IMG/VR virus record: IMGVR_UViG_3300034012_003212
Location: 62,001-126,000 of that record
Length of the DNA stretch: 64,000 nucleotides
Strand: one strand, 5' to 3'
Shown here: positions 6,023 through 30,908 of the stretch, piece after piece
Numbering within the stretch: the stretch's first letter is position 1
Layout of the letters: every line of letters begins with the position of its first letter
Translations under genes and position numbers: made by a program
Notes under the pieces: generated by a model
Seen by the model: only the letters and a program-made list of their open reading frames with translations
The model's database searches: none
What the model was told of the DNA's origin: nothing

Positions 6023-7886
6023 AGTCTTCCTCCACCTTAGGCTTATTAAATTTCACATCACTGGATATCCTTGTGTCCTCGAACGCAGGCCGAAGTTCGA
6101 TTGAAGTCAATGAATCTTCGGATAATACGGTAGGGAGGCCGAAATTCACAAACTTTTCCACATCGTTGATATTAACTACACTTGGAACCTGGAAGTCCAC
6201 TCTGTCTATAATTTCTTCTGATGTTGTAGATGAATTGAATTCAACACTTCCTATGCCAAACTCAACGCTAGGGGTCTTCAATTCAACCATCTCCGTTATA
6301 TCCAGATCAACCGTTGGTGCTGTGAATTTTACTTCGGATAATTGATCATCAACTTTAGGGACATCGAAAGATATGTTTGATATATCAGTGGACACTGTCG
6401 GTAGTTCGAACGAGATGTCGTTGATTTCGGTGGCAACAGTAGGAGCTACGTATTCTATTGCTGCCAGCGACTCATCAACTTTAGGTTTGTCGAACGTGAC
6501 ATCTCCTATTGAACTATCAACTTTAGGCTTCTGTAGATTAACGTCGGATGATATAGTTGTCTCAAAAGAAGGTCTTACTAGATTCACATTTGAGATCTCT
6601 GTCTCGACCTTTGGCCTCATAAATTCTACTTGATTAGGCATATCTTCATCTAATTTTGGTTCTTCAAATTCAATTTGTGGTTCAATATTAACATCTTGCG
6701 TTGGCCTCTCAAATTCGATCGAGTTTCTTATGTCAGTTGTTACGCTCGGACGGCCAAATTCGATTAATCTTGGTGTTTCTCCTGTGATTCCGGCTGAGCT
6801 CTCAATGGCCTGCATTATCGTTCTTGCTTGTTCTGCTCTTGAAGCTGACATGTCCATGGAATTTAGTTCAGCTTGACGGATTCTTTCACGCTCTTCTCTT
6901 GGAAGAGCTTCAACCGTGTCAGCTTTAGTGAATTCCATATTATTCAGAAAATAGTCACGTATGTTGTTGTTGCTAGATGCAATTACATTCTCATAATTAT
7001 TTTCATACTCTCTTATGAACGGTGCTAAAAAACTCCTATAATTCGTCACATCACGAAAATCATTGAATGATGCACCGCTTCCCCCTTGTTTTATGATGAG
7101 ATCTCGTTTCATCTCACCGAGCATGTAGTTTAGAAGTTTATATGAGTTTGCCTCTTGTACCCTTCCAACTTTTATGTTAAATGATGCTCCGGCAGTTGTG
7201 TATTCATCCCCCTTTAGGGTTTTAGCAGGGACAGATGAACTAAAGTCGAATTCGCAATCAAAACACCTGAACGCAATGGCAGAAACGTGGTTCAACCAAT
7301 CAGGACGAAGAGAATTCCTGCCCTGTTGAACAAATGTCTTCAAATATCTCGCCTCTCCTGCTATCACCGTCATATTGAACCTCCGTTTATTCAACGGAAG
7401 AAGTTCACGAAAGTATAACCTGTCCCATGAAGCCTTTCTGTATAAATCAGCAAGAGCCGTCATACGAAGGTCCACCGTCTCGTAACAATCCAAAGTTAAT
7501 GTAACATCATCAATCTGGGTCTTTGAGTCGTTTGACGCAGAAGGATATCCCCATTTCCAAAGACCCTCGAGTCCTGATATCTGTTTAAAAAACCAAGGAA
7601 AATCATCAGAAACTCTGCTCAGAAGCCACCTGAACTCCTTGAGCGCTTCCGCCTTTCCTTGTTCTCCGGTCCTACGGAGATAACTTATAGCACTTTCATC
7701 CCTGTCCTCTGATAAGAGAAGACCTTGTGTGACTTCATTATCATTGTTGAGTGGCTCAAAATCAAATAGCACCCTAAATGTGATAAAAGACGGATCATTG
7801 TACCTTAACTTATCGTCAGGTGTTGTTCCAGCTGACTCGAAGACGAACTTCCTCTCGAGTCTACCGACGTGCATGATTCCGCTCAT
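6012..7886 (-). CDS. Probable baseplate/tail structural protein with a C-terminal 14-16 aa repeat array
   Basis: 624-aa ORF in the baseplate cluster; globular N-terminus (NDPSFITFRVLFDF...DCYETVDLRMTALADLYRKA) followed by repeats. Confidence 0.55.
   Translation of the reverse strand: MSGIMHVGRLERKFVFESAGTTPDDKLRYNDPSFITFRVLFDFEPLNNDNEVTQGLLLSEDRDESAISYLRRTGEQGKAEALKEFRWLLSRVSDDFPWFFKQISGLEGLWKWGYPSASNDSKTQIDDVTLTLDCYETVDLRMTALADLYRKASWDRLYFRELLPLNKRRFNMTVIAGEARYLKTFVQQGRNSLRPDWLNHVSAIAFRCFDCEFDFSSSVPAKTLKGDEYTTAGASFNIKVGRVQEANSYKLLNYMLGEMKRDLIIKQGGSGASFNDFRDVTNYRSFLAPFIREYENNYENVIASSNNNIRDYFLNNMEFTKADTVEALPREERERIRQAELNSMDMSASRAEQARTIMQAIESSAGITGETPRLIEFGRPSVTTDIRNSIEFERPTQDVNIEPQIEFEEPKLDEDMPNQVEFMRPKVETEISNVNLVRPSFETTISSDVNLQKPKVDSSIGDVTFDKPKVDESLAAIEYVAPTVATEINDISFELPTVSTDISNISFDVPKVDDQLSEVKFTAPTVDLDITEMVELKTPSVEFGIGSVEFNSSTTSEEIIDRVDFQVPSVVNINDVEKFVNFGLPTVLSEDSLTSIELRPAFEDTRISSDVKFNKPKVEEDFGS
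6015..6764 (-). repeat. About 17 degenerate protein repeats, consensus (V/I)xFxxPxVxxxI
   Basis: IEFGRPSVTTDIRNS / IEFERPTQDVNIEPQ / VEFMRPKVETEISN / VTFDKPKVDESLAA / ISFELPTVSTDISN / VKFNKPKVEEDFGS. Confidence 0.85.
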
Positions 7887-9121
7887 TCGCCTTGAAATTT
7901 TGTTATAAGCGCAGCATCTGGTGTGTTCTCTGTGTTTGGTATCGATAGATCAGAACGCTGCCATTCTTCTCTCCAGACAAAATCATCATGACCAAGTTCA
8001 AGGAACCTCTCATGGATCTTCTTGTCATAGTATGATGCTATATATCTCACGGCCCGTTGTATCTCTGCCCTTCTTGGTTCCTGTGTGTTGTTTCCGCCTG
8101 CATTCATGTACTGTATGTAACACAGTTTAGGAACGTGTATCATCCTCGTGCCAAGGAAACTCCTCACGACAAGTTCATAATCATCTGCTATGTGCAATCG
8201 AGGATTATGGCCTCCTATTTCGTGGTAGAACTTTCGCTCCCACGCGCGTATGTGATTGGGGCACGCAATGATATGCCTCATCGTTTTTGGATTGATGGGC
8301 ACAGTCTCACATGTGTACTGGGCGTTATTATAGTTCGTGGTGTAGTGTTTGCCGTAACCGTATCCCCAAAAATCCCCGTAATTAACACATCCTCCGGTTT
8401 CAAAAACCTCAGACGCGTCCGTGTATAGGAATTTTCCTTCCGGATATTCGCCGAAACCGCGTTTAACGTGATCGAGTGCCCAAGGAGTCAGAGCATCATC
8501 ATGATCGAGTTCGACGAGGTATTTTCCTGTACAAAGACCCGCTGCATTTCGCTTCACTTCTCCTATGATTCCGCTGGGTTTGTTTGATTTAAAAACACGT
8601 ATACGGTGGTCCTGGCTCGCAAGCTGCAGGAGCATATCAAAGGTCTTTCCTCCGTCATTTGAATCATCGTACAAGACCCATTCCCAATTTGAGTGCCACT
8701 GATTCTTGAGAGATGTGAAAACGCGATCGATTCGATTCCCGGTTCTGTACGTGGGGGTAAAACAGCTTATCAACGGATCTTCGTCATTCTTCTCCTGGTT
8801 TAAAATAGAGTCAATAAAACAGAAATACGCAGAATCTCCTATGTTGCCATCATCGGATTTTATATTTTCCACGTGTATCCATTTTCTCCTGATGCTATAT
8901 GGCGCGTTGTACAACTGTGCGAATAAAGACACATCAGGCCCGGTTGTTATGTACACCATAGGATTTATAGTCCTGATGATGAAATTGAGATCATCGGTAT
9001 GCGAAAAAAAGTGACACTCAAAATCATGGGATTCTGAAATCCACTGTACATTTGTTGAGTGTATCTCCGTCTTTACTTTACAATCCTTAGAGAATATCGC
9101 TACTACTGGTGTGATTGGCAT
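7883..9121 (-). CDS. Glycosyltransferase family 2 with an N-terminal extension
   Basis: ISCFTPTY...NWEWVLYDDS...GEVKRNAAGLCTGKYLVELDHDD...HIADDYEL (GT-A fold with DxD motif). Confidence 0.9.
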   Translation of the reverse strand: MPITPVVAIFSKDCKVKTEIHSTNVQWISESHDFECHFFSHTDDLNFIIRTINPMVYITTGPDVSLFAQLYNAPYSIRRKWIHVENIKSDDGNIGDSAYFCFIDSILNQEKNDEDPLISCFTPTYRTGNRIDRVFTSLKNQWHSNWEWVLYDDSNDGGKTFDMLLQLASQDHRIRVFKSNKPSGIIGEVKRNAAGLCTGKYLVELDHDDALTPWALDHVKRGFGEYPEGKFLYTDASEVFETGGCVNYGDFWGYGYGKHYTTNYNNAQYTCETVPINPKTMRHIIACPNHIRAWERKFYHEIGGHNPRLHIADDYELVVRSFLGTRMIHVPKLCYIQYMNAGGNNTQEPRRAEIQRAVRYIASYYDKKIHERFLELGHDDFVWREEWQRSDLSIPNTENTPDAALITKFQGE

Positions 9122-9143
9122 TACTTATCCCTTTGAAAAAAAC

Positions 9144-10559: not shown

Positions 10560-10560
10560 G

Positions 10561-16785: not shown

Positions 16786-17111
16786 GCAAACAACCTCATT
16801 AAATTATCTTCGTAAAATCTCCTTTTGTCTTGATCCATCTGATCGATCTGGGATAACACAGTATTTTTCAATTGTATTAGAACCTTAGAAAAATGGACCA
16901 CTGCACCATCCGCTAGAACGTCTTTTTGGTTAGACATGAAACTACCGGTTATTCCTTTTAACCTCCAGAATATGTAAGGAGGAGAATCTATATATTCAAT
17001 GGTAACCTGCTTCCAACCAGGAGGTTGTATGAACATCCTATCAGCTTGGTCCCATTCAAGTGATTCTTCTAAATTGTAATCGAGCTTCATACTATATTCC
17101 TTGGCCACCAA
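16782..17111 (-). CDS. Hypothetical protein
   Basis: 109-aa ORF overlapping both neighbours. Confidence 0.6.
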   Translation of the reverse strand: MVAKEYSMKLDYNLEESLEWDQADRMFIQPPGWKQVTIEYIDSPPYIFWRLKGITGSFMSNQKDVLADGAVVHFSKVLIQLKNTVLSQIDQMDQDKRRFYEDNLMRLFA

Positions 17112-17779
17112 TCATCTTTCTGTATACCCATGAGCTCTAAAACTAATTCCAGTTCCCGGTCTGCGTTTATCCTATTGGGTAATTGCCAGTGCTGGCTCCC
17201 AACGGGTTTGGTGTGCTTTACGACAACAGAATCAACTATTCCTAGACCTTCATACTTTAGTTCCTTTGCCCATATTATATCCTGCCCCCAGCCGGAGTAT
17301 GTGATCTTTAACGTCCATAGTAGATTCTTCAGGACCTCAGATTTAAACAATGGGCACATTATCTCGACAAAATTAGTCCTTCTGAATCCATTTTTATTCC
17401 TATTGACGACGAGTTCGAAGCTTCTAAAACTATCTTGTGACAATGACGGCTGGCATATATTGCAGTCATTTGATTCCGCCTCGTCGAATAATCTTACTAT
17501 GTCATCAACTGTACCAAAATCAACATCATAATCAGGAAGCCAGATGTACTTATACTTATTAAAAACTTCCGGCCAATGCGTGTTCAGTATATTGTACAGT
17601 ATATGGTGCTTGAACCCCTTGAATGAAAACGTCTTCATGGACTTTGAAATATCAAAATCCGGTGGTATTGTGTCGAACGATATGTGCGCAACATCGAATC
17701 CAGGGCCGCCGTACAAAGAATTGTAAAAGCCTCCTGGTGCTATCGTACACAACACTAGTCTATCGTTATTGCTTCGCAT
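17087..17779 (-). CDS. DUF707-family putative glycosyltransferase (GT-A-like)
   Basis: YKYIWLPDYD...CQPSLSQDS...RRTNFVEIMCPLF...SGWGQDIIW. Confidence 0.8.
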   Translation of the reverse strand: MRSNNDRLVLCTIAPGGFYNSLYGGPGFDVAHISFDTIPPDFDISKSMKTFSFKGFKHHILYNILNTHWPEVFNKYKYIWLPDYDVDFGTVDDIVRLFDEAESNDCNICQPSLSQDSFRSFELVVNRNKNGFRRTNFVEIMCPLFKSEVLKNLLWTLKITYSGWGQDIIWAKELKYEGLGIVDSVVVKHTKPVGSQHWQLPNRINADRELELVLELMGIQKDDWWPRNIV

Positions 17780-18002
17780 TCTGCTGCTTCTCTTGATTTG
17801 ACGACATTGACTCTATCGTCTTTGTCTTATCAAAAAATGTCACGGCGTCATATACCATCTTGGACTCCTGGAGTGTGTATGCGCCTCTTTGCTGAGCCCG
17901 CTCAACTGCACTTATGAGTATGTTGATCGCTTTTACTGGATCATCAACAACAAATTGAGGTTGTTCCTGTTGTTTTTCTGCCGTCGTATTTGTTTCTTCC
18001 AT
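17766..18002 (-). CDS. Small conserved-type hypothetical viral protein
   Basis: AINILISAVERAQQRGAYTLQESKMVYDAV. Confidence 0.65.
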   Translation of the reverse strand: MEETNTTAEKQQEQPQFVVDDPVKAINILISAVERAQQRGAYTLQESKMVYDAVTFFDKTKTIESMSSNQEKQQNAKQ

Positions 18003-18011: not shown

Positions 18012-18854
18012 TTATTTAAGTATGAATTTTTTTAATAGATTAAGATAATCCTGTTGTTTCATCGATTCTAATCTTTCTTTGTCCGATACTATGCATTCCA
18101 TCTCATTGATAAAAGCATCATTGTTTCCGTCAAAAATAGAAACAATGTTGAATTCATATGGGGTTTTTGCAAGTTCATCTGAATCAAAACCATCTACAAT
18201 CTTTTGTGCAACATCAAAATGCCTCTCGTAGTAGTGTGTGTTGTCAGAGAAATGGTGGTATGTGCCCAGTTTAATGTTTTCATACCCCCTCAACTTCAAT
18301 TGATGCAGCATCGATTGCTGTACTGTTGAGAAGAATGGCGCGTCATATTGCAGTCCATAGAATATATCGTTTGATCTCATCTGTACCTTCATGTTTAATT
18401 TCGAATCTCTGACCCAAAAATTAACATACATCGTACACACGAAATCTTTTACACCACTTTTCTGGTAATCAGGGGTGTTAAACACCATAACAGCTTGTCT
18501 TGTGTTTATATCATTCGCGAGACAGTCCAATGCCCACTGGAACTGATCATGATTCCTCTTTTGAATGATGTAGCCATAATTGGAATTTATGATTCCATTC
18601 ACTCTGAGATTATCCCAGAAATTAGAGAAGTGGCGGATCTTGTCAGTAGAAAGATCGCACAACATGTACCACCACAATTCTCCTGCAAAATATTTCCAGT
18701 TGAACTTCCTCGATGAGAAGTTCATGATACAGAGTCTGGGATCGATCTCTAGGTGTGTGAGAGTCTTTTCCCTCACCTTTAGGTTTCTTGGCGCACATTC
18801 ATCCTGCATTGTAATCAGAAGATCGTACACACACTGATTTAGGCTTTTAGGCAT
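18012..18854 (-). CDS. gp42: dCMP hydroxymethylase-like enzyme (thymidylate synthase superfamily, cytosine-specific clade)
   Basis: YFAGELWWY, KDFVCTMY and MRSNDIFYGLQYD parallel T4 gp42 (RELEWY, SDFMCTNT, MRSNDVVFGFRND); Asp rather than Asn at the specificity position. Confidence 0.8.
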   Translation of the reverse strand: MPKSLNQCVYDLLITMQDECAPRNLKVREKTLTHLEIDPRLCIMNFSSRKFNWKYFAGELWWYMLCDLSTDKIRHFSNFWDNLRVNGIINSNYGYIIQKRNHDQFQWALDCLANDINTRQAVMVFNTPDYQKSGVKDFVCTMYVNFWVRDSKLNMKVQMRSNDIFYGLQYDAPFFSTVQQSMLHQLKLRGYENIKLGTYHHFSDNTHYYERHFDVAQKIVDGFDSDELAKTPYEFNIVSIFDGNNDAFINEMECIVSDKERLESMKQQDYLNLLKKFILK

Positions 18855-18884: not shown

Positions 18885-19970
18885 TTAAAAGAGCGCAACA
18901 GATCTGTTGGGATTTTGAAATTTATTCTTCTCGTCATTCTCAAAATTGTACTGATAACTGCTTCTTGAAAGATGCACGGATCCAGGCTTTTCCATGAATT
19001 TTGATGAGTATTCCTCTGGATCGATTGTATACCAAAAATCTGGCCATGTTATAGGGGCAAATCCCAATCTAGAACTATGTTCCATAAGTTCATCGTTGAA
19101 CAATCTCATAACATTGGATCGTTCTTCCCTTGAACCAAAGAATGGAGTTCCCTTGTACCAACCGGTTTTAGGTATACGTCTGTCCTCGTTTTCTATTGGG
19201 AGGAGGCACACAGGAGAAACAGTTTCAAGTTCGTACGAATCCATAAGTTTTACGAGGGATTCCATGTATTTGTTGCATAACTTTACGGCGGAATCCTGTG
19301 GATTAGATTCGCGAAGCAAATGGTGCCTAACATCTATATTACCGAAGTATGTTATGACATTCTTTGGGTAAACACCATCATAGATGAATTTGGATAAATC
19401 GCCGTCTTTTATGGCTCCATATAGCGTCTTTCCGTCGTTTCTATTTATGTTCGATCCAGGAACATACACTGAAACAGTGTGACTATCGCCCATGGCAAAC
19501 ACTTCGGATCGAAGGACGACTCGAACGGTTGGCACATTTGAACATATGTCACTGAACTGTGATGGATTCAATGATTTCCAAAAATCTTCACATGAGTTCA
19601 TCCTAGACAGAAGAACTGTTCCATAATCTGGCATTCTTTCATTCAAGCAGAATATGTCTCCGTTGAATATAGCCAGTCTGTTTATTCGATGTGCGTTTTC
19701 GTCACTCGCGCCCGAGAACATATTGAATGTTCCCTTATAGTCCATGGGAAGAAGGACTAGCCATGCGTCGAATTCATTCACGTCCTGTCCCTTTTCGAGT
19801 AACTTTGCATCAATTCCGGCGTGTCTCAGCTGATTGATGACAAGAAATGTCCAGGAGGATTTATGGCTTTCTGGCTTTTTGCTATACGTAGAAATAACGT
19901 CATCTACACAGACCTTTTTGCCATGCAATCTTTTTGATAGATCATAGACATCAATAAATGTTTGCATCAC
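18885..19970 (-). CDS. Two-domain protein: T4 beta-glucosyltransferase-like N-terminal domain plus SGNH-like domain; putative DNA-modifying enzyme
   Basis: N-terminus DVNEFDAWLV...FNMFSG...FNGDIFCLNERMPDY; C-terminus GDSH, DGKTLYG, YFGNID, SVHL; lies directly upstream of the hydroxymethylase. Confidence 0.5.
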   Translation of the reverse strand: MMQTFIDVYDLSKRLHGKKVCVDDVISTYSKKPESHKSSWTFLVINQLRHAGIDAKLLEKGQDVNEFDAWLVLLPMDYKGTFNMFSGASDENAHRINRLAIFNGDIFCLNERMPDYGTVLLSRMNSCEDFWKSLNPSQFSDICSNVPTVRVVLRSEVFAMGDSHTVSVYVPGSNINRNDGKTLYGAIKDGDLSKFIYDGVYPKNVITYFGNIDVRHHLLRESNPQDSAVKLCNKYMESLVKLMDSYELETVSPVCLLPIENEDRRIPKTGWYKGTPFFGSREERSNVMRLFNDELMEHSSRLGFAPITWPDFWYTIDPEEYSSKFMEKPGSVHLSRSSYQYNFENDEKNKFQNPNRSVALF

Positions 19971-20263
19971 TTTCCATTCAGATAGTTTTCTAATGCCTGT
20001 ATGTATGCGACAGCATCCAAGAGATTATCTTGTTTATGTGTATAGCTCTCTCTGGATAGTTTTAGGGCTATCATGGCCTTGTACATGTGTTCTGCGTCAA
20101 GTGTTAGGCCAGTCATGCCATTGAATATTTGCGCAGCTCTCGCCATACCTTCCGAGAATGGTCCATACTGTCTTTCCTTTTCCTCCGACCTCTGGTTAAC
20201 TATTTTATCTGCCTGTTGCAGTATACTATCTTCATTGGTCTTTGTTTGTTTCTTGGGTTTCAT
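19967..20263 (-). CDS. DUF6378-family protein (MazG-like all-alpha nucleotide pyrophosphatase candidate)
   Basis: ILQQADKIVNQRSEEKERQYGPF...MIALKLSRE...DNLLDAVAYI. Confidence 0.75.
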   Translation of the reverse strand: MKPKKQTKTNEDSILQQADKIVNQRSEEKERQYGPFSEGMARAAQIFNGMTGLTLDAEHMYKAMIALKLSRESYTHKQDNLLDAVAYIQALENYLNGK

Positions 20264-20280
20264 ATGGTATAGTTATGATT

Positions 20281-20700
20281 CTAAAAGACTTCTTCTGTTT
20301 TTACCCATTCCATGTATTTTATCAGGACTCTGTCCTTTGGTTTAACGCGGTTGTCATGTCTTTGAAAAATCATCCATGAATCTCTTGCGTATTCCCCGAT
20401 TCCATGCAATTCACTAGGATCTTCCCCGTTCCACTGGAGCCATTCATTCGAGAATCGTATGAGCTTCTTTGAACGAATATTCTGAAACCCGAGTGGTTTT
20501 ATACATCGCGCGACTTCAATTGGATCTGCCTTAGATAATCTATCTGCATTGGGGTACTTTTCAAAAAATTCATGTCTGACCAGGTCAACTTGACGAAAAC
20601 TCGTCTGGTTCAACATCATGCAGACCACCAGCATCTTCCATGGATCATCTCGGTATATTTCTTGTCTCAGATTATACGGACTTAATTTAGGATGTTTCAT
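20281..20700 (-). CDS. MBD4-like HhH-GPD DNA glycosylase (T/U:G mismatch type)
   Basis: DDPWKMLVVCMMLNQT...FFEKYP...IKPLG...ELHGIGEYARDSWMIF...VKPKDRVLIKY; catalytic Asp retained (cf. MBD4 VHPEDHKLNKY). Confidence 0.85.
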   Translation of the reverse strand: MKHPKLSPYNLRQEIYRDDPWKMLVVCMMLNQTSFRQVDLVRHEFFEKYPNADRLSKADPIEVARCIKPLGFQNIRSKKLIRFSNEWLQWNGEDPSELHGIGEYARDSWMIFQRHDNRVKPKDRVLIKYMEWVKTEEVF

Positions 20701-21731: not shown

Positions 21732-22373
21732 TTACACTTTATACCATTCACGATTTCTAGATTCATCACTCTCGCACCAATCATCAAACGATATGGCATT
21801 TGCATCCTTTTCTGAAAGTATCGGATCAATTCCTAGATCTTTCCAGTCACAATCAAATGAGTCCCATCTGATTGATCTTTCCTTTTCATGAAACCTGTTC
21901 TCGTCGCATTTATAGCAAACATCCGCAACATCACTTAGAACCTGAAACCCATTTGCAAAACCGCTAGGAATCCATACCATCTTTGGTTCATTATCATTTA
22001 GATGTATCTTCACATGCTTACCGAATGTAGGGGATCCTCTACGGAGATCTAGTTCAACGAGCAAGATCTCGCCCCTGACAACTCTTATCAGTTTCCCCAT
22101 ACCAAACATGTACTGAAAGTGCATACCTCGGATCACGCCACGCTTTGATCTTGAGTGATTATCCTGAACGAATGATCCCGGAAGATCGTTATACGCGAAT
22201 GAGATCTTATTGAAACTTTCTTGAAAGAAACCACGATCATCCTCAAATCTCTTTCCTGTTATGATTTCCACGCCACCGAGAACAACTTCTATGCTATCTA
22301 TTGCATTTTTGCTCATAAGGCTGATTTTCTTGTGTATTGAATCCAAGGATTCTCGTGAATTTTTTAGTTCCAT
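21732..22373 (-). CDS. rmlC: dTDP-4-dehydrorhamnose 3,5-epimerase
   Basis: FEDDRGFFQESF...FVQDNHSRSKRGVIRGMHFQ...DLRRGSPTFG...WIPSGFANGFQVLS. Confidence 0.95.
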   Translation of the reverse strand: MELKNSRESLDSIHKKISLMSKNAIDSIEVVLGGVEIITGKRFEDDRGFFQESFNKISFAYNDLPGSFVQDNHSRSKRGVIRGMHFQYMFGMGKLIRVVRGEILLVELDLRRGSPTFGKHVKIHLNDNEPKMVWIPSGFANGFQVLSDVADVCYKCDENRFHEKERSIRWDSFDCDWKDLGIDPILSEKDANAISFDDWCESDESRNREWYKV

Positions 22374-22427
22374 AAAAACATCCTGTATTTTTGCTGTAAT
22401 CTAACAAAAAATTACAAATTTTTACAC

Positions 22428-22465
22428 AAAAAAATAAGGGCCCCGAAAAAATATCGGAGGCCCTT
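22428..22465 (-). terminator. Intrinsic terminator after the major capsid gene
   Basis: Minus strand AAGGGCC(T)CCGA...TCGGGGCCCTT followed by ATTTTTTT. Confidence 0.8.
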
Positions 22466-22503
22466 AACATTCTATAACCTAGGATCCCTTAGAATCCTTT
22501 AGG

Positions 22504-24333
22504 TTATGCCAAACCTGCTGTCGGCGGCTCAACCCAGAAAGTGTAGTATTGTGCTTCGGGGTAGAAACCAGCGTCAACCAGAGCGTAACGGCTCTTCACT
22601 GCGATCTTCGGCGACATTGTACCTTCAGCGATTGTGCTGATGGACTCTGCCATGAGGTAAGGCATGAACTTGATACCGGGTTCGATATCTGCACCCTTAC
22701 GACCAACGAGAACGCGTGTATCTTCCCATGTCATGTTAGGATCAACATAAACTGTCATTCCGAACAATGTACCAGCGGGATACAATTGGCCATTAGATTG
22801 GTTGAGGTTGTTATCAAACGGAGAGAACGTGAAGCCCTTAACAACGTTCAATGCCGAAATAACTTGGGCATTTGTAACGATGAAGTTAGCCGGGCCACGA
22901 CGACCGCGTGTGTGAATCAGGTTAGAAGCAGCATGGATCTTGCTAACAATACGATGTTGTACCGTTGTCAAGTTCTCGAATCCACCGTAATCAGCGAATG
23001 CGGGGATGTTGTTGCTCCAAGAAATTGCGCTATCAGATTTACCGATGAAGCTCAGAGTAGATGCGGATGTAGTTTGTGTAGCATCGCATGACAGGTTAAG
23101 AGTAAAACCTTGTGTCTGATAAACATCGTAGTTGTTCTGCCAGCCAAGTGCGAATGCACGGCTCAAGATGTGCTTGTTGATCGTCTGAGAAACTTCGTTA
23201 ACCAACACGCCTTCTGCCATACCAAGGATGTCGATACCGAATTGACGGTTAAGATCCTGGATCTGCTCAGTTGTTACGCTGATGTTAACTTGGAATGTAC
23301 CAGCCTGAACGTTCTTTGTGAACGTCTGGATGCCCATCGAACGTGAATACGTAGATTCACCGGTCGAACGATTCATCGGATCGTATGCCTTTGTACCATC
23401 GGTGAAAGGACCATTCCATGTGTTTGTGTCACTGTTGCCAGCGCCAGAAGGACCATATATGTGATTCTCGAGAGCCGATACGTATGTAGGCTTGTTGCCG
23501 TTGCAGCTTGCGAATGCTTCTGTATCTGCTGTGTTTGCGGATGCTTGACCTACGATCGCAGAGTAGGAACTGGTAGTGTTACCAAAACCGAATACGTCAG
23601 CGATGGAAACTGTGTTCTCATTTGTGCCTGCTGTGTATGCACCAGTCGATGCGATAGTACCAGTAGAAGTTACGCGGAAAATCAAATCGCCAGTAACGAA
23701 TGACTTACCTACGTATATCACCTTTGCAGCAGAGGTTGCTGCTAGTGTAACAGCATAACCTGTTCCGCTAGCAGTGTTCGAAGAAGCTTGTAGAGGCAAT
23801 GCATAATATGTCGTTCCAACTGCAAGTTGATCTGTGCTTGCATCGTATATAGAGCTAGTAGCGACTGCAAACATCAACGGTTGGTTTGTATTTGCATTCA
23901 AGTTATCAGCTGTATCAAGTTTACCACCAGCATAGATATAATCCATGTAAGGAAGGATACCTGTCGGACCCGGCATGGGGATAACCGAAACGATATCGAA
24001 ACCTATTGTCTTTGCTGCAACTTGGATAGCAAGAGGAAGCAACGACGGGAATTTATCACCAGAGCCTTGGTAAGCTGCATTATAGAAACCGGAAGCCGAT
24101 GTGCCATAAGCTGTACCGAGGTTAACTGCGCCCTGACCGGGAACGTTGATGAGCTGCGCAAGACCTGTGCCTTGGAAAGACTCGTTGAGGGATGAACTTT
24201 CGTTCATCTGATGGTAGTGGCAATACTTCGACAACCAAGTAGTCTTGTAGTTGTCGTTGACACCAACATCCTTAAGTACCGGGGCCCACTCGTTTACAAC
24301 TTGAGCCTCATTTATATGCATAAGATTATTCAT
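22504..24333 (-). CDS. gp23: Major capsid protein, T4 gp23-like
   Basis: LLPLAIQVAAKTIGFDIVSVIPMPGPTG...EQIQDLNRQFGID...RGRRGPANFIV...YMPYLMAE-like KFMPYLMAE...PKIAVKSRYALV. Confidence 0.95.
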   Translation of the reverse strand: MNNLMHINEAQVVNEWAPVLKDVGVNDNYKTTWLSKYCHYHQMNESSSLNESFQGTGLAQLINVPGQGAVNLGTAYGTSASGFYNAAYQGSGDKFPSLLPLAIQVAAKTIGFDIVSVIPMPGPTGILPYMDYIYAGGKLDTADNLNANTNQPLMFAVATSSIYDASTDQLAVGTTYYALPLQASSNTASGTGYAVTLAATSAAKVIYVGKSFVTGDLIFRVTSTGTIASTGAYTAGTNENTVSIADVFGFGNTTSSYSAIVGQASANTADTEAFASCNGNKPTYVSALENHIYGPSGAGNSDTNTWNGPFTDGTKAYDPMNRSTGESTYSRSMGIQTFTKNVQAGTFQVNISVTTEQIQDLNRQFGIDILGMAEGVLVNEVSQTINKHILSRAFALGWQNNYDVYQTQGFTLNLSCDATQTTSASTLSFIGKSDSAISWSNNIPAFADYGGFENLTTVQHRIVSKIHAASNLIHTRGRRGPANFIVTNAQVISALNVVKGFTFSPFDNNLNQSNGQLYPAGTLFGMTVYVDPNMTWEDTRVLVGRKGADIEPGIKFMPYLMAESISTIAEGTMSPKIAVKSRYALVDAGFYPEAQYYTFWVEPPTAGLA

Positions 24334-24347
24334 GTTTGTTTATTTTT

Positions 24348-26262: not shown

Positions 26263-26317
26263 AACACTAGTGGGAAAAAATTAAATTTTTTTCTCAATTT
26301 GTCCCTATAATTTTAGA

Positions 26318-27388
26318 TTATGCTAAAAACATCCTTTGTTCCTTTGACCTTCTTTCAGAAAGACCCGACAGAGTTCTACCCTGTGACTTAACCCAACGAG
26401 GGAACTCTGATGCAGCCCCTGCATAGTCCTTCGAATTGATCTTTTTCAGAAGAGTGCTTTTTTTGAAATTGCCAAACCCGACGTTGTACGCAAAAGAAAC
26501 GAGAGCATCCCATTGATTCTGTGTAACGGGGACTTTGACGACTGATCTCATCTTCTGTTCAAATTTTCCTACGACCCTTCTCATCATGGAATCTGCCTGT
26601 TCCCTTGTTATCGGTCCCATGTTTGGATTTTTAACACCTACACCGAATCCAATCGAATATCCATTTCCATCTTTGTATGCATTCTGCTTGAAACCCTCGT
26701 ATGCCTGTATGGCCTGGATTCCGCGTTCAGAGATTCGAATGTTTGATGGATTTATCGTCCCGGACGGTTGGTATGGTTCAAATTCGGTGGTGTCTGCATC
26801 ACCTGAACCATCATCTTTTGTTCCAGCCAAAGCAATAGAGCTTGTGGCCGCAGATGAGGTTATTCCGATTGATGCTAATTTCGGTAGGTCTTTTAGCGGA
26901 ACCTTTGTGACGATATTTACGCCCGATGAAGGGTCTTTGAAATACCCGAAGAAGTCTTTCTGCTGGACGTCGATGTTCTCGCCGTTCTTTGCGTCCTTTG
27001 ATAGAGCAATCTTGGCGTCTATGATCTTTTTTATCCTCGGATAAACAGAAACGACCATATCATCACTGACTGCGTCTGAATCAACGTCAGTCAATATGTT
27101 TACGTGTTTTATGGCAGTTGAAAGATCTGCCTTTGCTGTTGTTATATCGAGCCCGGAATCCTTCAAAAAGGACTCATGTTTGTCGATGAGTTTCAGGAGC
27201 TTGTCCCTATCGAACATCACCTGAACTGAAAATTTTTTCCGCTGAGATTGTTTTTCGCCTGATAGATATCTAAGTAATACCTGAAGATCAGAATAATTGA
27301 ACCCGTCGTTAAGGCAGGAAAGTATCCTAACAAACGCTACATTATAAGGGATGATATCCTCTATGTTCTCTAAAAGAAAATATTTCAT
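26318..27388 (-). CDS. GH24 phage lysozyme domain with a ~210-aa N-terminal extension
   Basis: ISERGIQAIQAYEGFKQNAYKD...SIGFG...TQNQWDALVSFAYNVG...STLLKKIN...EFPRWV...GLSERRSKE. Confidence 0.9.
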   Translation of the reverse strand: MKYFLLENIEDIIPYNVAFVRILSCLNDGFNYSDLQVLLRYLSGEKQSQRKKFSVQVMFDRDKLLKLIDKHESFLKDSGLDITTAKADLSTAIKHVNILTDVDSDAVSDDMVVSVYPRIKKIIDAKIALSKDAKNGENIDVQQKDFFGYFKDPSSGVNIVTKVPLKDLPKLASIGITSSAATSSIALAGTKDDGSGDADTTEFEPYQPSGTINPSNIRISERGIQAIQAYEGFKQNAYKDGNGYSIGFGVGVKNPNMGPITREQADSMMRRVVGKFEQKMRSVVKVPVTQNQWDALVSFAYNVGFGNFKKSTLLKKINSKDYAGAASEFPRWVKSQGRTLSGLSERRSKEQRMFLA

Positions 27389-27392
27389 GCCC

Positions 27393-27400
27393 TATATATC
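27393..27400 (-). promoter_or_regulatory. Putative late promoter GATATATA
   Basis: Ends 4 nt before the lysozyme ATG (near-leaderless). Confidence 0.6.
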
Positions 27401-27405
27401 TTTTT

Positions 27406-28074
27406 TCACACATGAATTGCAAGCAGCTCCGGAAGTTGAACATACTTAAACATCTTCCCTAGTCTATCGTATGTGTATCCATCGTTGTAATAACCCTTCT
27501 CTCCTATGAAATGATCCCAGCCACACTCCATCATGGATTTTGCACGAACAACAACCTGTAGTGTATCTATGTTCTGGAATACAGGAGGGACTCCACTTAT
27601 TACTTGAGGAGCATTACCTAAGTGAGAAGGAAGGGGGCCTAGATGCAATATCTTGCATACAGAAAACTCTGAATCAGGGTTCTCATTGAGTATATCTATA
27701 TTTTTTTTAACAAAATCAGGAAAAAGAAGATTATCATCATCGAGATGGATGATGAATTTGCATACATCATTTTGTATGTCATCCGCAAGTATATTATTCA
27801 TAACATGATGACGCACACCGCCTCCGTATGAATTTGTATTCACTGCGGTATAATCATACACAAGCTTTACGTGTTCCGGTAGCACTTCCTGTATTTCCTC
27901 TACGATTGAGCATGCGTGATCTTCTTTTGGGCCGTCTGAACACACTATCTGAAGAATATCAAGATTATTTGGTTTGATCTGCCATGCAACAGATGTTAAG
28001 CATCTTTTTATTATATCTCCATTTCTCTTATATGTGGGAGTTATGACTGCGATGTATGGATTGATGTTTTGCAT
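27406..28074 (-). CDS. Glycosyltransferase family 2
   Basis: IAVITPTYKR...CSDG...IIHLDDDNLLFPD. Confidence 0.85.
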   Translation of the reverse strand: MQNINPYIAVITPTYKRNGDIIKRCLTSVAWQIKPNNLDILQIVCSDGPKEDHACSIVEEIQEVLPEHVKLVYDYTAVNTNSYGGGVRHHVMNNILADDIQNDVCKFIIHLDDDNLLFPDFVKKNIDILNENPDSEFSVCKILHLGPLPSHLGNAPQVISGVPPVFQNIDTLQVVVRAKSMMECGWDHFIGEKGYYNDGYTYDRLGKMFKYVQLPELLAIHV

Positions 28075-28092
28075 CGTTTCTTGTGTTGATTG

Positions 28093-29587: not shown

Positions 29588-29621
29588 TGATTTGTTTTCC
29601 TTGTAAAACCATAAAATCACA

Positions 29622-30908
29622 TTGCTATATATGTTCTTTGGCGCGCATGAAAAATTCGAACAAGGATTATATTTTGAGGCACTAGAATTGTTCAGGGCCA
29701 CAAAAAATGATGCAGATGACCGTATACGTTATTGGTCGAATATTTTCATTGGAAGATGCATGGATGGATTAAACATGCCAGGGTCTTTGGAACACTACAA
29801 AGAGGCACATGTTGTATTTCCAGGAAGGGCTGAAGCACTCCATGAGATTGGAAAATTCTATTACAAAACAGGGGATCTGATTACGTCAGAAAAATTCCTC
29901 CAGATGGCAAAATCGTGCAATCCTGGCGTTGTATGCATACGTTATGAACACGATAAATACTTCGAGAGGAATCACGAACTTCTGATTGATATCTATGTGC
30001 ATCAATCGAGGTATAACGACGCAGAAGAGCTGTTGTATACTCTAAAACAGAACGGCTCAAAGGAGCACTACGACTATAACAGAGTGAACTATAACCACCT
30101 GTTTGCGAGGCACTACAACAATGTTTTCATTGAATTTGCGAAAGTGAAAGCAGTAAATGCAAAAAAAGAACTGGTTATACAGCTGCCCGATGGATATGAT
30201 GGCCTCGGAGACCAATTGGTATTCAGCCATTTACCCGAACTAGCAAAAAAGACAGGAAGGTATGAAAAAGTGTACGTGTCGGAATTCAATAAATACGGTA
30301 GGCCGGAGTACAAAGATCTTGTGTGGAAAATGAACCCATTTGTTGACGGATTCGTTGATCTTCCAGGGACTTTCACAAATCGTATTCAGTTTGCAAGGAT
30401 CCTCGAGAAATGGATAGATCCAATGCCAGGATTAAATCTTCTGGATTCCATGATGTTACTGCACGACATAGATGACGGGGAAAGGGACCACAAGCCTGTG
30501 TGTTACTATAAGTTGAGGAAAAGAACAGACCTAGATGATATATCAGAAAAAACAATACTCGACATTGGATCAAGGACAATAAGTACGAAGGATTTTAATG
30601 TTGATGTATTTCTCCAGGAACTGGAAAAACAAGGATGTGTTCCAGATTTGTTTATAGTATCAAAGGGGCTGACTAATTCAATGGATGTGGATAAAGAGAA
30701 ATCCATAACACCTGAGGATATCTATGACTGGTGCGATATCATGATGTCGTGCAAAGAATATGTGTGTTTTAATAGTGGTGGGTACTGGCTATCATCCGCC
30801 CTTGGAGTAAAAGGTTCACATGTATGGATAAAGGAAAAAAATCTACCTGCTTGGTCATTTCTTGATCATAGAAACATCCACATGAGCCTTGCTACCATTT
30901 GTCAATAG
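29622..30908 (+). CDS. TPR-domain plus GT-B-type glycosyltransferase-like protein
   Basis: TPR helices (FPGRAEALHEIGKFYYKTG); DGLGDQLVFSHLP...NPFVDGF...YVCFNSGGYWLSSALG resembles GT9/fucosyltransferase motifs. Confidence 0.65.
   Translation: MLYMFFGAHEKFEQGLYFEALELFRATKNDADDRIRYWSNIFIGRCMDGLNMPGSLEHYKEAHVVFPGRAEALHEIGKFYYKTGDLITSEKFLQMAKSCNPGVVCIRYEHDKYFERNHELLIDIYVHQSRYNDAEELLYTLKQNGSKEHYDYNRVNYNHLFARHYNNVFIEFAKVKAVNAKKELVIQLPDGYDGLGDQLVFSHLPELAKKTGRYEKVYVSEFNKYGRPEYKDLVWKMNPFVDGFVDLPGTFTNRIQFARILEKWIDPMPGLNLLDSMMLLHDIDDGERDHKPVCYYKLRKRTDLDDISEKTILDIGSRTISTKDFNVDVFLQELEKQGCVPDLFIVSKGLTNSMDVDKEKSITPEDIYDWCDIMMSCKEYVCFNSGGYWLSSALGVKGSHVWIKEKNLPAWSFLDHRNIHMSLATICQ

What the first reader, a model, noticed from the sequence alone, without database searches (positions are those of the whole stretch)
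7883..30908. Dispersed glycosylation toolkit inside the morphogenesis region: possible virion glycosylation
Seen: GT2 (7883), DUF707 (17087), RmlC (21732, directly after the capsid gene), a second GT2 (27406) and a TPR-GT (29622). The window also encodes Thr/Ser-rich virion proteins (GTQ collagen repeats, capsid insertion, PTV/PSV repeats). Established: mycobacteriophage virions and giant-virus fibrils are glycosylated by virus-encoded GTs, and the collagen-like BclA of Bacillus anthracis carries rhamnose-containing glycans. Inference: a rhamnose-related glycan coat on fibres or capsid; host-surface remodelling is an alternative.
Basis: partly seen in the sequence, partly recalled or inferred. 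Interest (0 to 1): 0.62.

Follow-up and report, generated by a model that had tools for sequence, protein, structure and literature searches.

The report
Jumbo phage sugar and glycosyltransferase toolkit
An uncultured 260-kb freshwater phage makes its own activated sugars and carries about ten sugar-attaching enzymes; one of them sits beside a T4-like enzyme that makes hydroxymethyl-cytosine, so the sugars may go onto the phage's DNA at least as plausibly as onto its coat.

Summary
All five flagged genes are real: GT2 (7883-9121), DUF707/GT-A (17087-17779), RmlC (21732-22373), GT2 (27406-28074) and a TPR + GT9-like protein (29622-30908).

The 260,658-bp virus record also encodes RmlA and RmlB equivalogs, an extra SDR, a DegT/PseC-like sugar aminotransferase, a GNAT and six more GT-like genes. 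No canonical RmlD was found.

It is a thymidylate-synthase homolog whose best solved relative is T4 dCMP hydroxymethylase. It keeps the catalytic Cys, the Glu and the Asp that sets cytosine specificity. A separate ThyX covers dTMP synthesis.

Homologs of this enzyme in four other phage lineages also lie 0-9 kb from GT or NDP-sugar genes.

Virion glycosylation stays possible. The TPR-GT and the head-module GT2 are conserved in relatives, and collagen-like fibres are present. Nothing tests it directly.

RmlC lies behind the capsid gene's terminator and is absent there in relatives, so its position says little. The acceptor is unresolved. I rate this a new variant of known kinds.

The parts
7883..9121 (-). 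GT2a: 412-aa soluble family-2 (GT-A) glycosyltransferase. The N-terminal ~110 aa is unassigned. It lies between unknown 624-aa and 471-aa proteins near the baseplate hub.
   Evidence: PF00535 at 49 bits. Partial NCBIfam matches to TuaG, WcaA and PglI. LDHDD motif. No predicted TM. 71-72% identical in relatives L011 and L013.
17087..17779 (-). DUF707-family GT-A glycosyltransferase, 230 aa. It is the candidate 5-hmC DNA glycosyltransferase.
   Evidence: PF05212 at 26.5 bits against 24.1. AF2 pLDDT 92.6. GT-A fold, Z 12.8 to TarP over 199 aa at rmsd 3.4, tied with SpsA and TarS. Invariant D83/D85. Adjacent to the TS-like gene here and in L011 and L013.
17766..18002 (-). 78-aa ORF between the TS-like gene and DUF707; function unknown.
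   Evidence: Conserved at 46-47% identity in L011 and L013. No family hit. Not homologous to the small ORFs at the same position in L041 and L042.
18012..18854 (-). Thymidylate-synthase-fold enzyme, 280 aa, predicted dCMP 5-hydroxymethylase (T4 gp42-like).
   Evidence: PF00303 at 62 bits. The best PDB match is T4 dCMP hydroxymethylase 1b49 at E 1.8e-18, against 1e-7 to 1e-9 for true TS. E59, C140 and D171 align with T4 E60, C148 and D179. D163 is kept at the E. coli D169 position, so the 5-hydroxycytosine signature of PMC13326640 is absent. All these residues are invariant in 13 homologs. ThyX lies elsewhere in the genome.
18885..19970 (-). 361-aa conserved protein of unknown function, directly upstream of the TS-like gene.
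   Evidence: phrog_13881 (unknown function) at 194 bits. No Pfam or NCBIfam hit. Syntenic in L007, L011-L013 and L020.
19967..20700 (-). DUF6378 (98 aa) and HhH-GPD (139 aa) genes at the head of the same co-directional block. This is nucleotide/DNA-metabolism context.
   Evidence: PF19905 at 46 bits and PF00730 at 34 bits. Conserved in relatives.
21732..22373 (-). RmlC, dTDP-4-dehydrorhamnose 3,5-epimerase, 213 aa.
   Evidence: TIGR01221 at 181.5 bits against 155.75. E 1e-40 to solved RmlC structures. The conserved segments DNHS, GKL, YK and SEKD stand unchanged in the alignment; I take them to hold the catalytic His, Lys, Tyr and Asp. Present in at least three independent lake metagenomes. 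Absent next to the MCP in relatives.
22441..22459 (-). Terminator-like GC hairpin followed by a T-run, between the MCP and RmlC.
   Evidence: the sequence is shown.
22504..24333 (-). Major capsid protein (Gp23-like) with an S/T/A/G-rich insertion. Candidate acceptor only.
   Evidence: PF07068 at 129 bits. 38-42% identical to Lak and uncultured megaphage MCPs. Composition.
27406..28074 (-). GT2b: 222-aa soluble GT2, between an AAA ATPase and a lysozyme-domain protein in the head module.
   Evidence: PF00535 at 30.3 bits. DDD motif. Conserved at 55-74% identity and syntenic in L007-L009, L011, L012 and L020. In L007 and L008 a guanylate-kinase-like gene lies between it and the AAA gene; L009 has that kinase gene too, beside an unannotated 210-aa gene at the contig end.
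29622..30908 (+). TPR (residues 1-175) + GT9-like GT-B (residues 178-428) glycosyltransferase. It is transcribed against the surrounding genes.
   Evidence: AF2 pLDDT 89. Foldseek top hits are SPINDLY and OGT at E about 1e-7, but TM is only 0.31. The TPR domain dominates the VIA list. The C-terminal domain sits with viral GT9 clusters. 30 full-length homologs at 40-61% identity carry only TPR Pfam hits or none, and two sources name theirs a TPR repeat protein. Syntenic in L007-L009. No homolog in 50,697 deposited phage records.
31941..33092 (-). 383-aa Gly-rich protein with an S/T-rich tail. Candidate acceptor only.
   Evidence: phrog_2295 at 164 bits.
37094..41635 (-). 1513-aa collagen-like (G-L/N/T/I-Q repeats) fibre protein. 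Candidate acceptor only.
   Evidence: 67% identical in L007-L009. Followed by tail-fibre-like genes.

Best explanation
The five genes are the window's share of a genome-wide, phage-encoded glycosylation system in an uncultured ~260-kb freshwater myovirus-like jumbo phage.

Shown:
- The phage encodes RmlA and RmlB. These give dTDP-4-keto-6-deoxyglucose.
- Two branches could follow from that intermediate. RmlC plus a generic SDR could give a 6-deoxy-L-hexose such as rhamnose. A DegT/PseC-like aminotransferase plus a GNAT could give an N-acetylated amino-dideoxyhexose.
- About ten soluble GT-like proteins are encoded.
- A gp42-like thymidylate-synthase homolog with the residues for dCMP hydroxymethylation is encoded, besides a ThyX.

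Inferred:
- The phage puts 5-hydroxymethylcytosine into its DNA.
- At least the adjacent DUF707 GT-A enzyme, and possibly others such as the GT25 and GT2 proteins, transfer phage-made sugars onto it. This would be a ThyS-plus-GT DNA hypermodification cluster of the kind described by Pyle et al., protecting the genome from restriction.
- The conserved TPR-GT9 and head-module GT2b may instead, or in addition, glycosylate virion proteins. That part is open.
For: - TS-like gene: PF00303. The best solved relative is T4 dCMP hydroxymethylase, by about 9 orders of magnitude over true TS. Glu, Cys and Asp179-equivalent residues are invariant in 13 homologs. A separate ThyX is present.
- DUF707 is a GT-A fold with a DxD motif. 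It lies one 78-aa ORF downstream of the TS-like gene, and this arrangement is kept in L011 and L013.
- Independent lineages link the TS-like gene to GT or sugar genes. L041 has TS-like, an 88-aa ORF, then GT25, with DUF2827 and GT2 within 8 kb. L128 has DUF2827 and GT2 within 7 kb. L042 has a methyltransferase-GT2 fusion and a TPR protein upstream and a kinase-like gene downstream. L129 has an SDR, GT7, NTP-transferase, GT2 and a sugar methyltransferase 3-9 kb away.
- The GT25 next to the TS-like gene in L021 has a homolog in this genome's second sugar cluster.
- Literature: GT-A and GT-B phage GTs next to ThyS homologs glycosylate 5hmC, and such clusters occur beside structural genes and extra sugar enzymes (10.1101/2023.12.21.572611). 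Phages that glycosylate cytosine encode their own NDP-sugar pathways (PMC13326640).
- RmlA, RmlB and RmlC all score above the equivalog cut-offs.
- No GT has a predicted TM segment and no Wzx/Wzy-like protein is encoded.
- Palindromes are only mildly depleted. This is weak evidence.
Against: - No dCTPase-type (MazG) or thymidylate/dNMP-kinase family hit was found in the record, and no homolog of the relatives' kinase. The T4-style route to full C replacement is therefore not demonstrably complete. The record is 88% complete and only a few families were tested.
- There is no T4 alpha/beta-GT or TAGT family hit.
- DUF707 homologs in other phages (L044, L045) sit in multi-GT clusters with no TS-like gene within 10 kb.
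- The GT-A fold match is generic: TarP is tied with many other GT-A enzymes.
- About ten GTs and two sugar branches are more than any known DNA glycan needs.
- GT-rich genomes make chance proximity fairly likely.
- No chemical or read-level evidence exists. All runs are held as contigs.
Confidence: 0.45

Rival explanations
1. Virion glycosylation. The GTs use phage-made dTDP-sugars to build O-glycans on capsid, collagen-like fibres or other S/T-rich structural proteins in the cytoplasm before or during assembly. This would parallel the mycobacteriophage capsid and tail-tube glycans and the giant-virus fibril glycans. It is not exclusive of DNA glycosylation.
For: - The TPR + GT-B architecture has the protein O-glycosyltransferases SPINDLY and OGT as top Foldseek hits.
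- The TPR-GT and GT2b are conserved and syntenic with the MCP, protease and lysozyme genes in relatives.
- GT2a lies among baseplate genes and is 71% conserved.
- Many GTs and two sugar branches (6-deoxyhexose, N-acetylated aminosugar) recall the sugar set I remember from Mimivirus fibrils (rhamnose, viosamine). That comparison is from my own knowledge; the review PMC9614988 came up in a search but I did not read it.
- Collagen-like and S/T-rich structural proteins are present.
- A late-promoter-like motif shared with head genes precedes the second sugar cluster.
- A weak Maf/sialyltransferase-like hit is present.
- DUF707 homologs elsewhere follow large, unannotated proteins (785-1132 aa) that I take for structural, in multi-GT clusters without a TS-like gene.
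Against: - There is no direct evidence of glycans.
- Foldseek TM is only 0.31, and the TPR repeats drive the matches. The catalytic domain looks GT9-like, not GT41.
- The 'structural' region is interleaved with nucleotide-metabolism genes.
- RmlC is behind a terminator and is not conserved beside the MCP.
- The nearest cultured relative by MCP, PTm1, has no GT in the 17 kb shown around its MCP gene (neck protein to the end of the record). From memory, not checked here, its virion bears head fibres.
- The TS-like/GT linkage points elsewhere for at least DUF707.
Confidence: 0.3
2. Host-envelope or metabolic takeover. The sugar pathway and GTs act as auxiliary metabolic genes. They would remodel or sustain host LPS, capsule or cell-wall glycans during infection, for example to block superinfection, or divert dTDP-sugar pools.
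For: - The GT2 proteins give their best, partial NCBIfam matches to Und-PP-linked glycan enzymes such as TuaG, WcaA and PglI.
- phrog_22739, GtrB-like, is a weak hit.
- PHROGs files phage RmlC under 'moron, auxiliary metabolic gene and host takeover'.
- RmlC sits at a moron-like site, behind a terminator and variable among relatives.
Against: - All GTs lack predicted TM segments. The record encodes no initiating-transferase-, flippase- or polymerase-like polytopic protein.
- The phage looks lytic and jumbo-sized, whereas serotype conversion is a temperate-phage trait. This rests on established knowledge.
- GT2b, GT2a and the TPR-GT are conserved core-like genes rather than variable morons.
Confidence: 0.12
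3. No common system. The flagged genes are unrelated acquisitions with different, possibly trivial, roles, and the TS-like enzyme makes unglycosylated 5hmC or has another activity. The 'toolkit' would then be a grouping artefact.
For: - The genes are dispersed over 23 kb of the window and over 190 kb of the genome.
- RmlC has no close viral relative and differs in conservation from the GTs.
- No RmlD equivalog is present.
Against: RmlA, RmlB and RmlC form consecutive steps of one pathway, and all score above the equivalog cut-offs. Without a transferase to use the product they would be pointless. The second cluster tightly packs an aminotransferase, a GNAT, an SDR and five GT-like genes.
Confidence: 0.08

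Closest known systems
ThyS/5mYOX-associated phage DNA glycosyltransferase clusters (Pyle et al., bioRxiv 10.1101/2023.12.21.572611; cited as Cell Rep 2024 in PMC12619734)
   Same: A thymidylate-synthase homolog lies next to a small soluble GT-A enzyme. Further GTs and an epimerase/SDR are encoded in the genome. The cluster sits beside structural genes. TarP is the top PDB fold match for the GT-A, as reported for their GT-A enzymes.
   Different: No TAGT-family hit, and their R...DDD...EDY/F motif is not evident in DUF707. The sugars they found were hexose, HexNAc and heptose drawn from the E. coli pool. Here the phage encodes dTDP-6-deoxyhexose and amino-dideoxyhexose routes. The genes are dispersed rather than one compact cluster.
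T4 dCMP hydroxymethylase gp42 with alpha/beta-glucosyltransferases
   Same: A TS-fold enzyme with the Glu, Cys and Asp179 equivalents, plus a separate dTMP synthase in the genome. The MCP and prohead protease are T4-like.
   Different: No AGT or BGT homologs. No MazG-type dCTPase or thymidylate-kinase-family kinase was detected. The candidate GT is GT-A, not GT-B.
RB69/DLP3/RL38J1 glycosyl-5-hydroxycytosine systems (Lee et al., NAR 2026, PMC13326640)
   Same: A TS homolog, DNA GTs and a phage-encoded NDP-sugar pathway (UDP-arabinose, UDP-Galf) in large myoviruses.
   Different: The diagnostic D169N substitution is absent here; Asp is retained. 5hmC rather than 5hoC is therefore predicted. The sugar nucleotides are dTDP- rather than UDP-linked, and the GTs belong to different families.
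Mycobacteriophage virion glycosylation (Freeman et al. 2023, PMC10527164, as cited in PMC12619734)
   Same: Phage-encoded GTs are located in or next to the structural gene block.
   Different: The phage lineage and GT set are unrelated. No C-terminal S/T/G-rich extension on the MCP was identified, only an internal insertion. The presence of glycans is untested.
Giant-virus (Mimivirus) fibril glycosylation clusters (review PMC9614988 came up in a search but was not read here; details are from my own knowledge)
   Same: Virus-encoded 4,6-dehydratase, 3,5-epimerase/reductase, 4-aminotransferase and N-acetyltransferase, plus many GTs. Collagen-like proteins are encoded in the genome.
   Different: Giant viruses use UDP-linked routes whereas this phage uses dTDP (RmlA/B). 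This is a prokaryotic virus. The acceptor here is unknown.
'Moraphages', large aquatic Bacteroidota-associated jumbo phages (PMC12619734)
   Same: Freshwater origin, 200-307 kb genomes, Lak-related markers, and four core GT orthogroups noted without an assigned function. This record is 260 kb, comes from lake metagenomes, and has an MCP nearest to Lak and uncultured megaphages.
   Different: Membership was not tested because no moraphage sequences were at hand. That paper does not mention rhamnose, thymidylate synthase or hydroxymethylation.

Membership tests
RmlC (dTDP-4-dehydrorhamnose 3,5-epimerase, TIGR01221/PF00908) | Score above the curated equivalog cut-off over the full-length cupin domain | tested here: met
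   181.5 bits against a cut-off of 155.75, covering model positions 3-174 of 176.
RmlC (dTDP-4-dehydrorhamnose 3,5-epimerase, TIGR01221/PF00908) | Catalytic His/Asp dyad, Tyr and Lys | tested here: met
   In the alignment to 6din the segments DNHS, GKL, YK and SEKD are conserved. The residue assignment rests on my knowledge of RmlC structures.
Complete dTDP-L-rhamnose pathway (RmlA-B-C-D) | RmlA and RmlB equivalogs present | tested here: met
   TIGR01207 at 416.7 bits against 360.65 (G000 23937-24803). TIGR01181 at 394.3 bits against 365.1 (G000 191968-192942).
Complete dTDP-L-rhamnose pathway (RmlA-B-C-D) | RmlD (dTDP-4-dehydrorhamnose reductase) equivalog present | tested here: not met
   The best TIGR01214 scores are 57-60 bits against a cut-off of 224. 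The spare SDR (G000 169787-170740) matches GalE best, at 163 bits, below its cut-off. It could still act as the 4-reductase, or the host enzyme could.
dCMP hydroxymethylase (T4 gp42 type, TS fold) | TS-fold domain with the catalytic Cys and the general-base Glu | tested here: met
   PF00303 at 62 bits. C140 and E59 align with T4 C148 and E60 and are invariant in 13 homologs.
dCMP hydroxymethylase (T4 gp42 type, TS fold) | Asp in place of E. coli ThyA Asn177 (cytosine specificity) | tested here: met
   D171 aligns with T4 D179. The D179N mutant entry 6l18 confirms the register. The residue is invariant.
dCMP hydroxymethylase (T4 gp42 type, TS fold) | Not the 5-hydroxy-dCMP synthase signature (D169N in E. 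coli numbering) | tested here: met
   D163 is retained in the SND segment. The criterion comes from PMC13326640.
dCMP hydroxymethylase (T4 gp42 type, TS fold) | Companion dCTPase and hm-dCMP kinase in the genome | tested here: not met
   No PF03819 or PF02223 hit, and no homolog of the relatives' kinases. Only these families were tested, and the record is 88% complete.
dCMP hydroxymethylase (T4 gp42 type, TS fold) | Enzymatic product is 5hm-dCMP | not testable with these tools
   Needs expression and LC-MS.
T4-type or TET-associated DNA glycosyltransferases (AGT, BGT, TAGT) | Match to PF11440, PF09198 or PF20691 | tested here: not met
   No hit at E <= 1 in the whole record.
GT2 (PF00535), for GT2a and GT2b | Pfam score above the gathering threshold and a DxD motif | tested here: met
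   49.1 and 30.3 bits against 23.3. LDHDD and LDDD motifs.
DUF707 (PF05212), GT-A clan | Pfam score above the gathering threshold, GT-A fold, DxD motif | tested here: met
   26.5 bits against 24.1. 16 of the 19 other homologs listed carry PF05212. Z 12.8 to GT-A enzymes. D83/D85 are invariant.
GT41 protein O-glycosyltransferases (OGT/SPINDLY) | N-terminal TPR superhelix fused to a GT-B catalytic domain | tested here: met
   AF2 model with TPR at 1-175 and a C-terminal strand/helix domain read as GT-B-like. OGT and SPY are the top Foldseek hits, and the only full-length VIA matches among the 50 rows shown are two OGT entries.
GT41 protein O-glycosyltransferases (OGT/SPINDLY) | Catalytic domain homologous to GT41 | tested here: inconclusive
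   TM is 0.31 with rmsd about 20 A. The C-terminal domain instead groups with GT9 (heptosyltransferase-like) viral clusters. The domain was not folded alone.
Lipid-linked surface-glycan systems (Wzx/Wzy, Gtr) | Polytopic membrane proteins (flippase, polymerase, GtrA/C) or membrane-anchored GTs | tested here: not met
   A crude hydropathy scan finds no ORF with more than 4 TM segments and none in any GT.
Phage virion glycosylation (mycobacteriophage type) | Glycans on capsid or tail proteins | not testable with these tools
   Requires virions. Only gene position is available.

The most novel reading that the evidence does not exclude
The phage decorates 5-hydroxymethylcytosine in its DNA with an oligosaccharide built from its own dTDP-activated 6-deoxy-L-hexose (rhamnose-type) and N-acetyl-amino-dideoxyhexose. 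I did not find this DNA glycan chemistry in the papers I read; they describe glucose, arabinose, galactose, hexose, HexNAc and heptose. The same phage-made sugar pool would be used by the conserved TPR-GT9 enzyme to glycosylate collagen-like virion fibres. One sugar factory would thus serve both genome and coat.
Probability: 0.15. Interest if true: 0.85.

Novelty: new variant of a known kind. Interest (0 to 1): 0.6.

Why it matters
Phage DNA glycosylation defeats restriction and CRISPR systems, and it complicates sequencing and engineering. Virion glycans change how phages are recognised.

The sugars reported on phage DNA in the papers read here are glucose, arabinose, galactose, other hexoses, HexNAc and heptose. 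Here a widespread lake phage, found in metagenomes of 16 studies, pairs a gp42-like hydroxymethylase with complete early steps of dTDP-6-deoxy- and amino-sugar synthesis and about ten GTs.

If the acceptor is DNA, this extends the chemistry of natural DNA hypermodification and supplies new DNA-glycosylating enzymes. If it is the virion, it would be a bacterial-virus counterpart of giant-virus fibril glycosylation.

Either way, it gives a function-testing handle on the unexplained 'core glycosyltransferases' of large aquatic Bacteroidota-type phages.

Tried and rejected
- A megablast of 10 kb against deposited phages found nothing. The TPR-GT has no tblastn hit in 50,697 phage records.
- I sought host clues through RmlC and RmlA in bacterial genomes. 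RmlC had no close relative. RmlA matched many phyla equally, at 55-62% identity, so it gives no host signal.
- RmlC in IMG/VR gave only one distant (27%) hit, so the usual context of phage RmlC could not be studied.
- The T4 late promoter TATAAATA is not enriched.
- A different motif, GATATATAG, precedes several head and tail genes and the second sugar cluster. It neither precedes nor excludes the TS-DUF707 block convincingly, so expression timing could not be used to choose an acceptor.
- The small ORFs and the GT-A genes next to TS-like genes in different lineages are not homologous by BLASTP.
- The 388-aa protein (G000 156611-157777) that co-occurs with TS-like genes in six other loci is DUF932-like, not a GT. 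I dropped it.
- Whole-model VIA search of the TPR-GT was swamped by TPR repeats.
- All public runs that hold the phage are kept as contigs, so no read-level sign of base modification and no RNA evidence could be obtained.
- Palindrome avoidance is only mild (O/E 0.79-0.87 for ACGT, CATG, GATC and CTAG). That is compatible with a protected genome but not diagnostic.
- No complex-prediction job was sent, because no specific enzyme-acceptor pair had enough prior support.

Full report
**What the window is.** The window is bases 62001-126000 of a single 260,658-bp IMG/VR virus record (linear, CheckV 88%). Nearly all of its genes lie on the minus strand.

The major capsid protein (22504-24333) is Gp23-like (PF07068, 129 bits). 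Its nearest relatives are an uncultured megaphage record and the Prevotella Lak megaphages (38-42% identity), then Tenacibaculum phage PTm1 (32%).

The same phage, at 95-99% or more identity, occurs in contigs of lake, freshwater and one crustacean metagenome. In all, 20 runs from 16 studies hold at least part of the stretch.

It fits the description of the recently named 'moraphages': freshwater origin, 200-307 kb, Lak-related, Bacteroidota hosts, and four core glycosyltransferase orthogroups of unassigned function (PMC12619734). I could not test membership.

**Check of the observation.** All five flagged genes are intact ORFs at the stated coordinates and belong to the stated families.
- GT2a (7883-9121): PF00535, E 8e-13.
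- DUF707 (17087-17779): PF05212, 26.5 bits against a cut-off of 24.1.
- RmlC (21732-22373): PF00908, 8e-54; TIGR01221, 181.5 bits against 155.75.
- GT2b (27406-28074): PF00535, 30.3 bits.
- The fifth gene (29622-30908, plus strand) has only sub-threshold TPR hits in Pfam.

For the fifth gene, an AlphaFold model built on 29 homologs (pLDDT 89) shows a TPR domain at residues 1-175 and a C-terminal domain with alternating strands and helices, which I read as GT-B-like. The ESM-Atlas search puts residues 178-428 with viral Glyco_transf_9 clusters (cosine 0.96, TM 0.72). 'TPR-GT' is therefore right.

The DUF707 model (pLDDT 92.6) is a GT-A fold. Its Z is 12.8 to TarP, tied with SpsA, TarS and others, and it has an invariant D-x-D. 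Both GT2s carry DxD-type motifs.

None of the GTs has a predicted membrane segment.

The neighbourhood does contain head, baseplate, adaptor-like and tail-fibre-like genes and a 1513-aa collagen-like protein. It is interleaved with nucleotide and DNA-metabolism genes.

**The toolkit is genome-wide.** It gives RmlA (G000 23937-24803; TIGR01207, 416.7 bits against 360.65) and RmlB (G000 191968-192942; TIGR01181, 394.3 bits against 365.1). No RmlD equivalog is present.

A second sugar cluster at G000 ~158-172 kb holds these genes:
- a GT9-like protein;
- a DegT/PseC-like 4-aminotransferase (PF01041, 246 bits);
- a third GT2;
- a GNAT;
- a phrog_1962 GT;
- a weak MptE/sialyltransferase-like protein;
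- a weak GT25-like protein;
- a generic SDR (GalE-like best match);
- a clear GT25 (50 bits).

The phage can therefore make dTDP-4-keto-6-deoxyglucose itself. It has plausible branches to a 6-deoxy-L-hexose (RmlC + SDR) and to an N-acetylated amino-dideoxyhexose (aminotransferase + GNAT). It encodes about ten GT-like proteins.

No GT1 and no polytopic Wzx/Wzy-like protein is present.

The gene at 18012-18854 is separated from DUF707 only by a 78-aa ORF. It is a thymidylate-synthase-family protein (PF00303, 62 bits).

Against solved structures its best match is T4 dCMP hydroxymethylase (1b49, E 1.8e-18). True thymidylate synthases reach only 1e-7 to 1e-9.

In that alignment E59, C140 and D171 correspond to T4 E60, C148 and D179. 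D179 replaces the Asn177 of E. coli ThyA and sets cytosine specificity. The D179N mutant entry 6l18 confirms the register.

The Asp at the E. coli D169 position is retained, so the D169N signature of 5-hydroxy-dCMP synthases (PMC13326640) is absent. All of these residues are invariant in 13 homologs from several phage lineages.

The genome also has a ThyX (165 bits), so this enzyme is not needed for dTMP. DUF6378 and HhH-GPD genes head the same co-directional block. I therefore predict a 5-hydroxymethyl-dCMP synthase.

**Context in relatives and other lineages.**

Close relatives:
- L011 and L013 keep the whole block from GT2a through DUF707, the 78-aa ORF and the TS-like gene. L011 also continues to the MCP, protease, lysozyme, GT2b and AAA genes.
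- L007 and L008 keep MCP, protease, lysozyme, GT2b, a guanylate-kinase-like gene, AAA and the TPR-GT. L009 begins at a contig end, with an unannotated 210-aa gene at the GT2b position, and keeps the rest.
- None has RmlC beside the MCP.

In the window a GC-rich hairpin with a T-run lies between the MCP and RmlC (22441-22459). RmlC is nevertheless stably present in this phage in at least three independent lake metagenomes. It has no close viral relative. It therefore looks like a lineage-specific addition at a moron-like site.

TS-like homologs at 30-54% identity in other phage lineages are again near GT or sugar genes:
- L041: TS-like, an 88-aa ORF, then GT25, with DUF2827 and GT2 within 8 kb.
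- L128: DUF2827 and GT2 within 7 kb.
- L042: a methyltransferase-GT2 fusion and a TPR protein upstream, and a kinase-like gene downstream.
- L129: an SDR, GT7, HAD-NTP-transferase, GT2 and a sugar C-methyltransferase 3-9 kb downstream.

The GT25 beside the TS-like gene in L021 is homologous to the GT25 of this genome's second cluster.

By contrast, distant DUF707 homologs (L044, L045) lie in multi-GT and sugar-modifying clusters with no TS-like gene within 10 kb. In L044 the cluster follows large, unannotated proteins (785-1132 aa) that I take for structural.

**Interpretation.** Published work shows three relevant things:
- GT-A and GT-B phage enzymes encoded next to ThyS homologs or TET-like oxygenases glycosylate 5hmC.
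- Such clusters occur beside structural genes and extra sugar enzymes (10.1101/2023.12.21.572611).
- Phages that glycosylate cytosine encode their own NDP-sugar pathways (PMC13326640).

The TS-like/DUF707 pair fits this pattern. I therefore rank DNA glycosylation as the best-supported acceptor hypothesis for at least part of the toolkit, with confidence about 0.45.

Its weaknesses are these:
- No MazG-type dCTPase, thymidylate-kinase-family kinase, T4-type GT or TAGT hit was found.
- The GT-A fold match is generic.
- Ten GTs and two sugar branches exceed what any described DNA glycan needs.
- No chemical or read-level evidence exists. All runs are held as contigs.

Virion glycosylation remains a live and not exclusive rival, at about 0.3. 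Points in its favour:
- The TPR + GT-B architecture has OGT and SPINDLY as top Foldseek hits. TM is only 0.31, though, and the catalytic half looks GT9-like.
- The TPR-GT and GT2b are conserved in the head module.
- Collagen-like and S/T-rich structural proteins are present.
- A GATATATAG motif shared with head genes precedes the second sugar cluster.
- The sugar set recalls what I remember of giant-virus fibril glycans. That is from my own knowledge; the review PMC9614988 came up in a search but I did not read it.

Host-surface remodelling is the least supported, because no membrane machinery or membrane-anchored GT is encoded.

**Novelty and verdict.** Phage GTs beside ThyS homologs, phage virion glycosylation, and GT-rich aquatic jumbo phages are all known kinds.

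What is new here is the combination in one widespread lake phage: a gp42-like hydroxymethylase, phage-encoded dTDP-6-deoxy/amino-sugar synthesis (RmlA, RmlB, RmlC, aminotransferase, GNAT), about ten GTs, and a conserved TPR-GT9 with no relative in any deposited phage record.

I rate it a new variant of a known kind, with interest 0.6. The acceptor can only be settled by nucleoside mass spectrometry and virion glycoproteomics.

Noticed in passing
window 18012-18854 (-): T4 gp42-like thymidylate-synthase homolog, a predicted dCMP hydroxymethylase, one small ORF upstream of the DUF707 GT. ThyX lies elsewhere, at G000 154189-154884.
   Followed up: yes
window 2434, 15531, 26260, 27398, 50279, 62340 (- strand) and 20731 (+ strand); also G000 159742 (+): A conserved GATATATAG-like motif lies 10-46 nt upstream of start codons. 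It precedes the prohead protease, lysozyme-domain, adaptor-like, 1130-aa and 1160-aa genes, and the gene that opens the second sugar cluster. It may be this phage's late-promoter element. The T4 motif TATAAATA is not enriched.
   Followed up: partly
window 37094-41635 (-) and 31941-33092 (-): A 1513-aa protein carries very long collagen-like G-(L/N/T/I)-Q arrays broken by two globular domains. A 383-aa poly-Gly protein has an S/T-rich tail. Both are probably fibres. The large one is 67% conserved in relatives.
   Followed up: partly
window 19967-20700 (-): DUF6378 and a short HhH-GPD (DNA-glycosylase superfamily) gene are conserved next to the hydroxymethylase block. Their role is unknown.
   Followed up: no
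window 11168-11779 (-): A RuvC-like resolvase hit (phrog_159) sits among baseplate-like genes. This shows that the 'structural' block is not purely structural.
   Followed up: no
window 22374-22503: A strong terminator-like hairpin follows the MCP gene. RmlC behind it is absent at this site in all relatives examined, but is present in this phage in several independent lake metagenomes.
   Followed up: yes
G000 156611-157777 (outside the window; L043:1611-2777): A 388-aa DUF932-like protein co-occurs within 10 kb of TS-like genes in six loci of other phage lineages (L014, L015, L018, L032, L034, L035). Its function is unknown and it is not a GT.
   Followed up: partly
L007 7955-8470 (relative): In relatives L007-L009 a guanylate-kinase/AAA_18-like gene precedes the AAA ATPase gene; in L007 and L008 it lies between GT2b and that gene. 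It has no homolog in this genome. It may be a nucleotide kinase linked to DNA modification.
   Followed up: partly
window 26318-27388 (-): A 356-aa protein has a C-terminal phage-lysozyme domain and an unassigned N-terminal ~220 aa. It is encoded between GT2b and the prohead protease, so it may be a virion-associated lysin.
   Followed up: no
window 50871-51952: Two overlapping ORFs on opposite strands each have 3-4 predicted TM segments (253 aa on the minus strand, 131 aa on the plus strand). One may be a holin-like membrane protein. The gene call is ambiguous.
   Followed up: no
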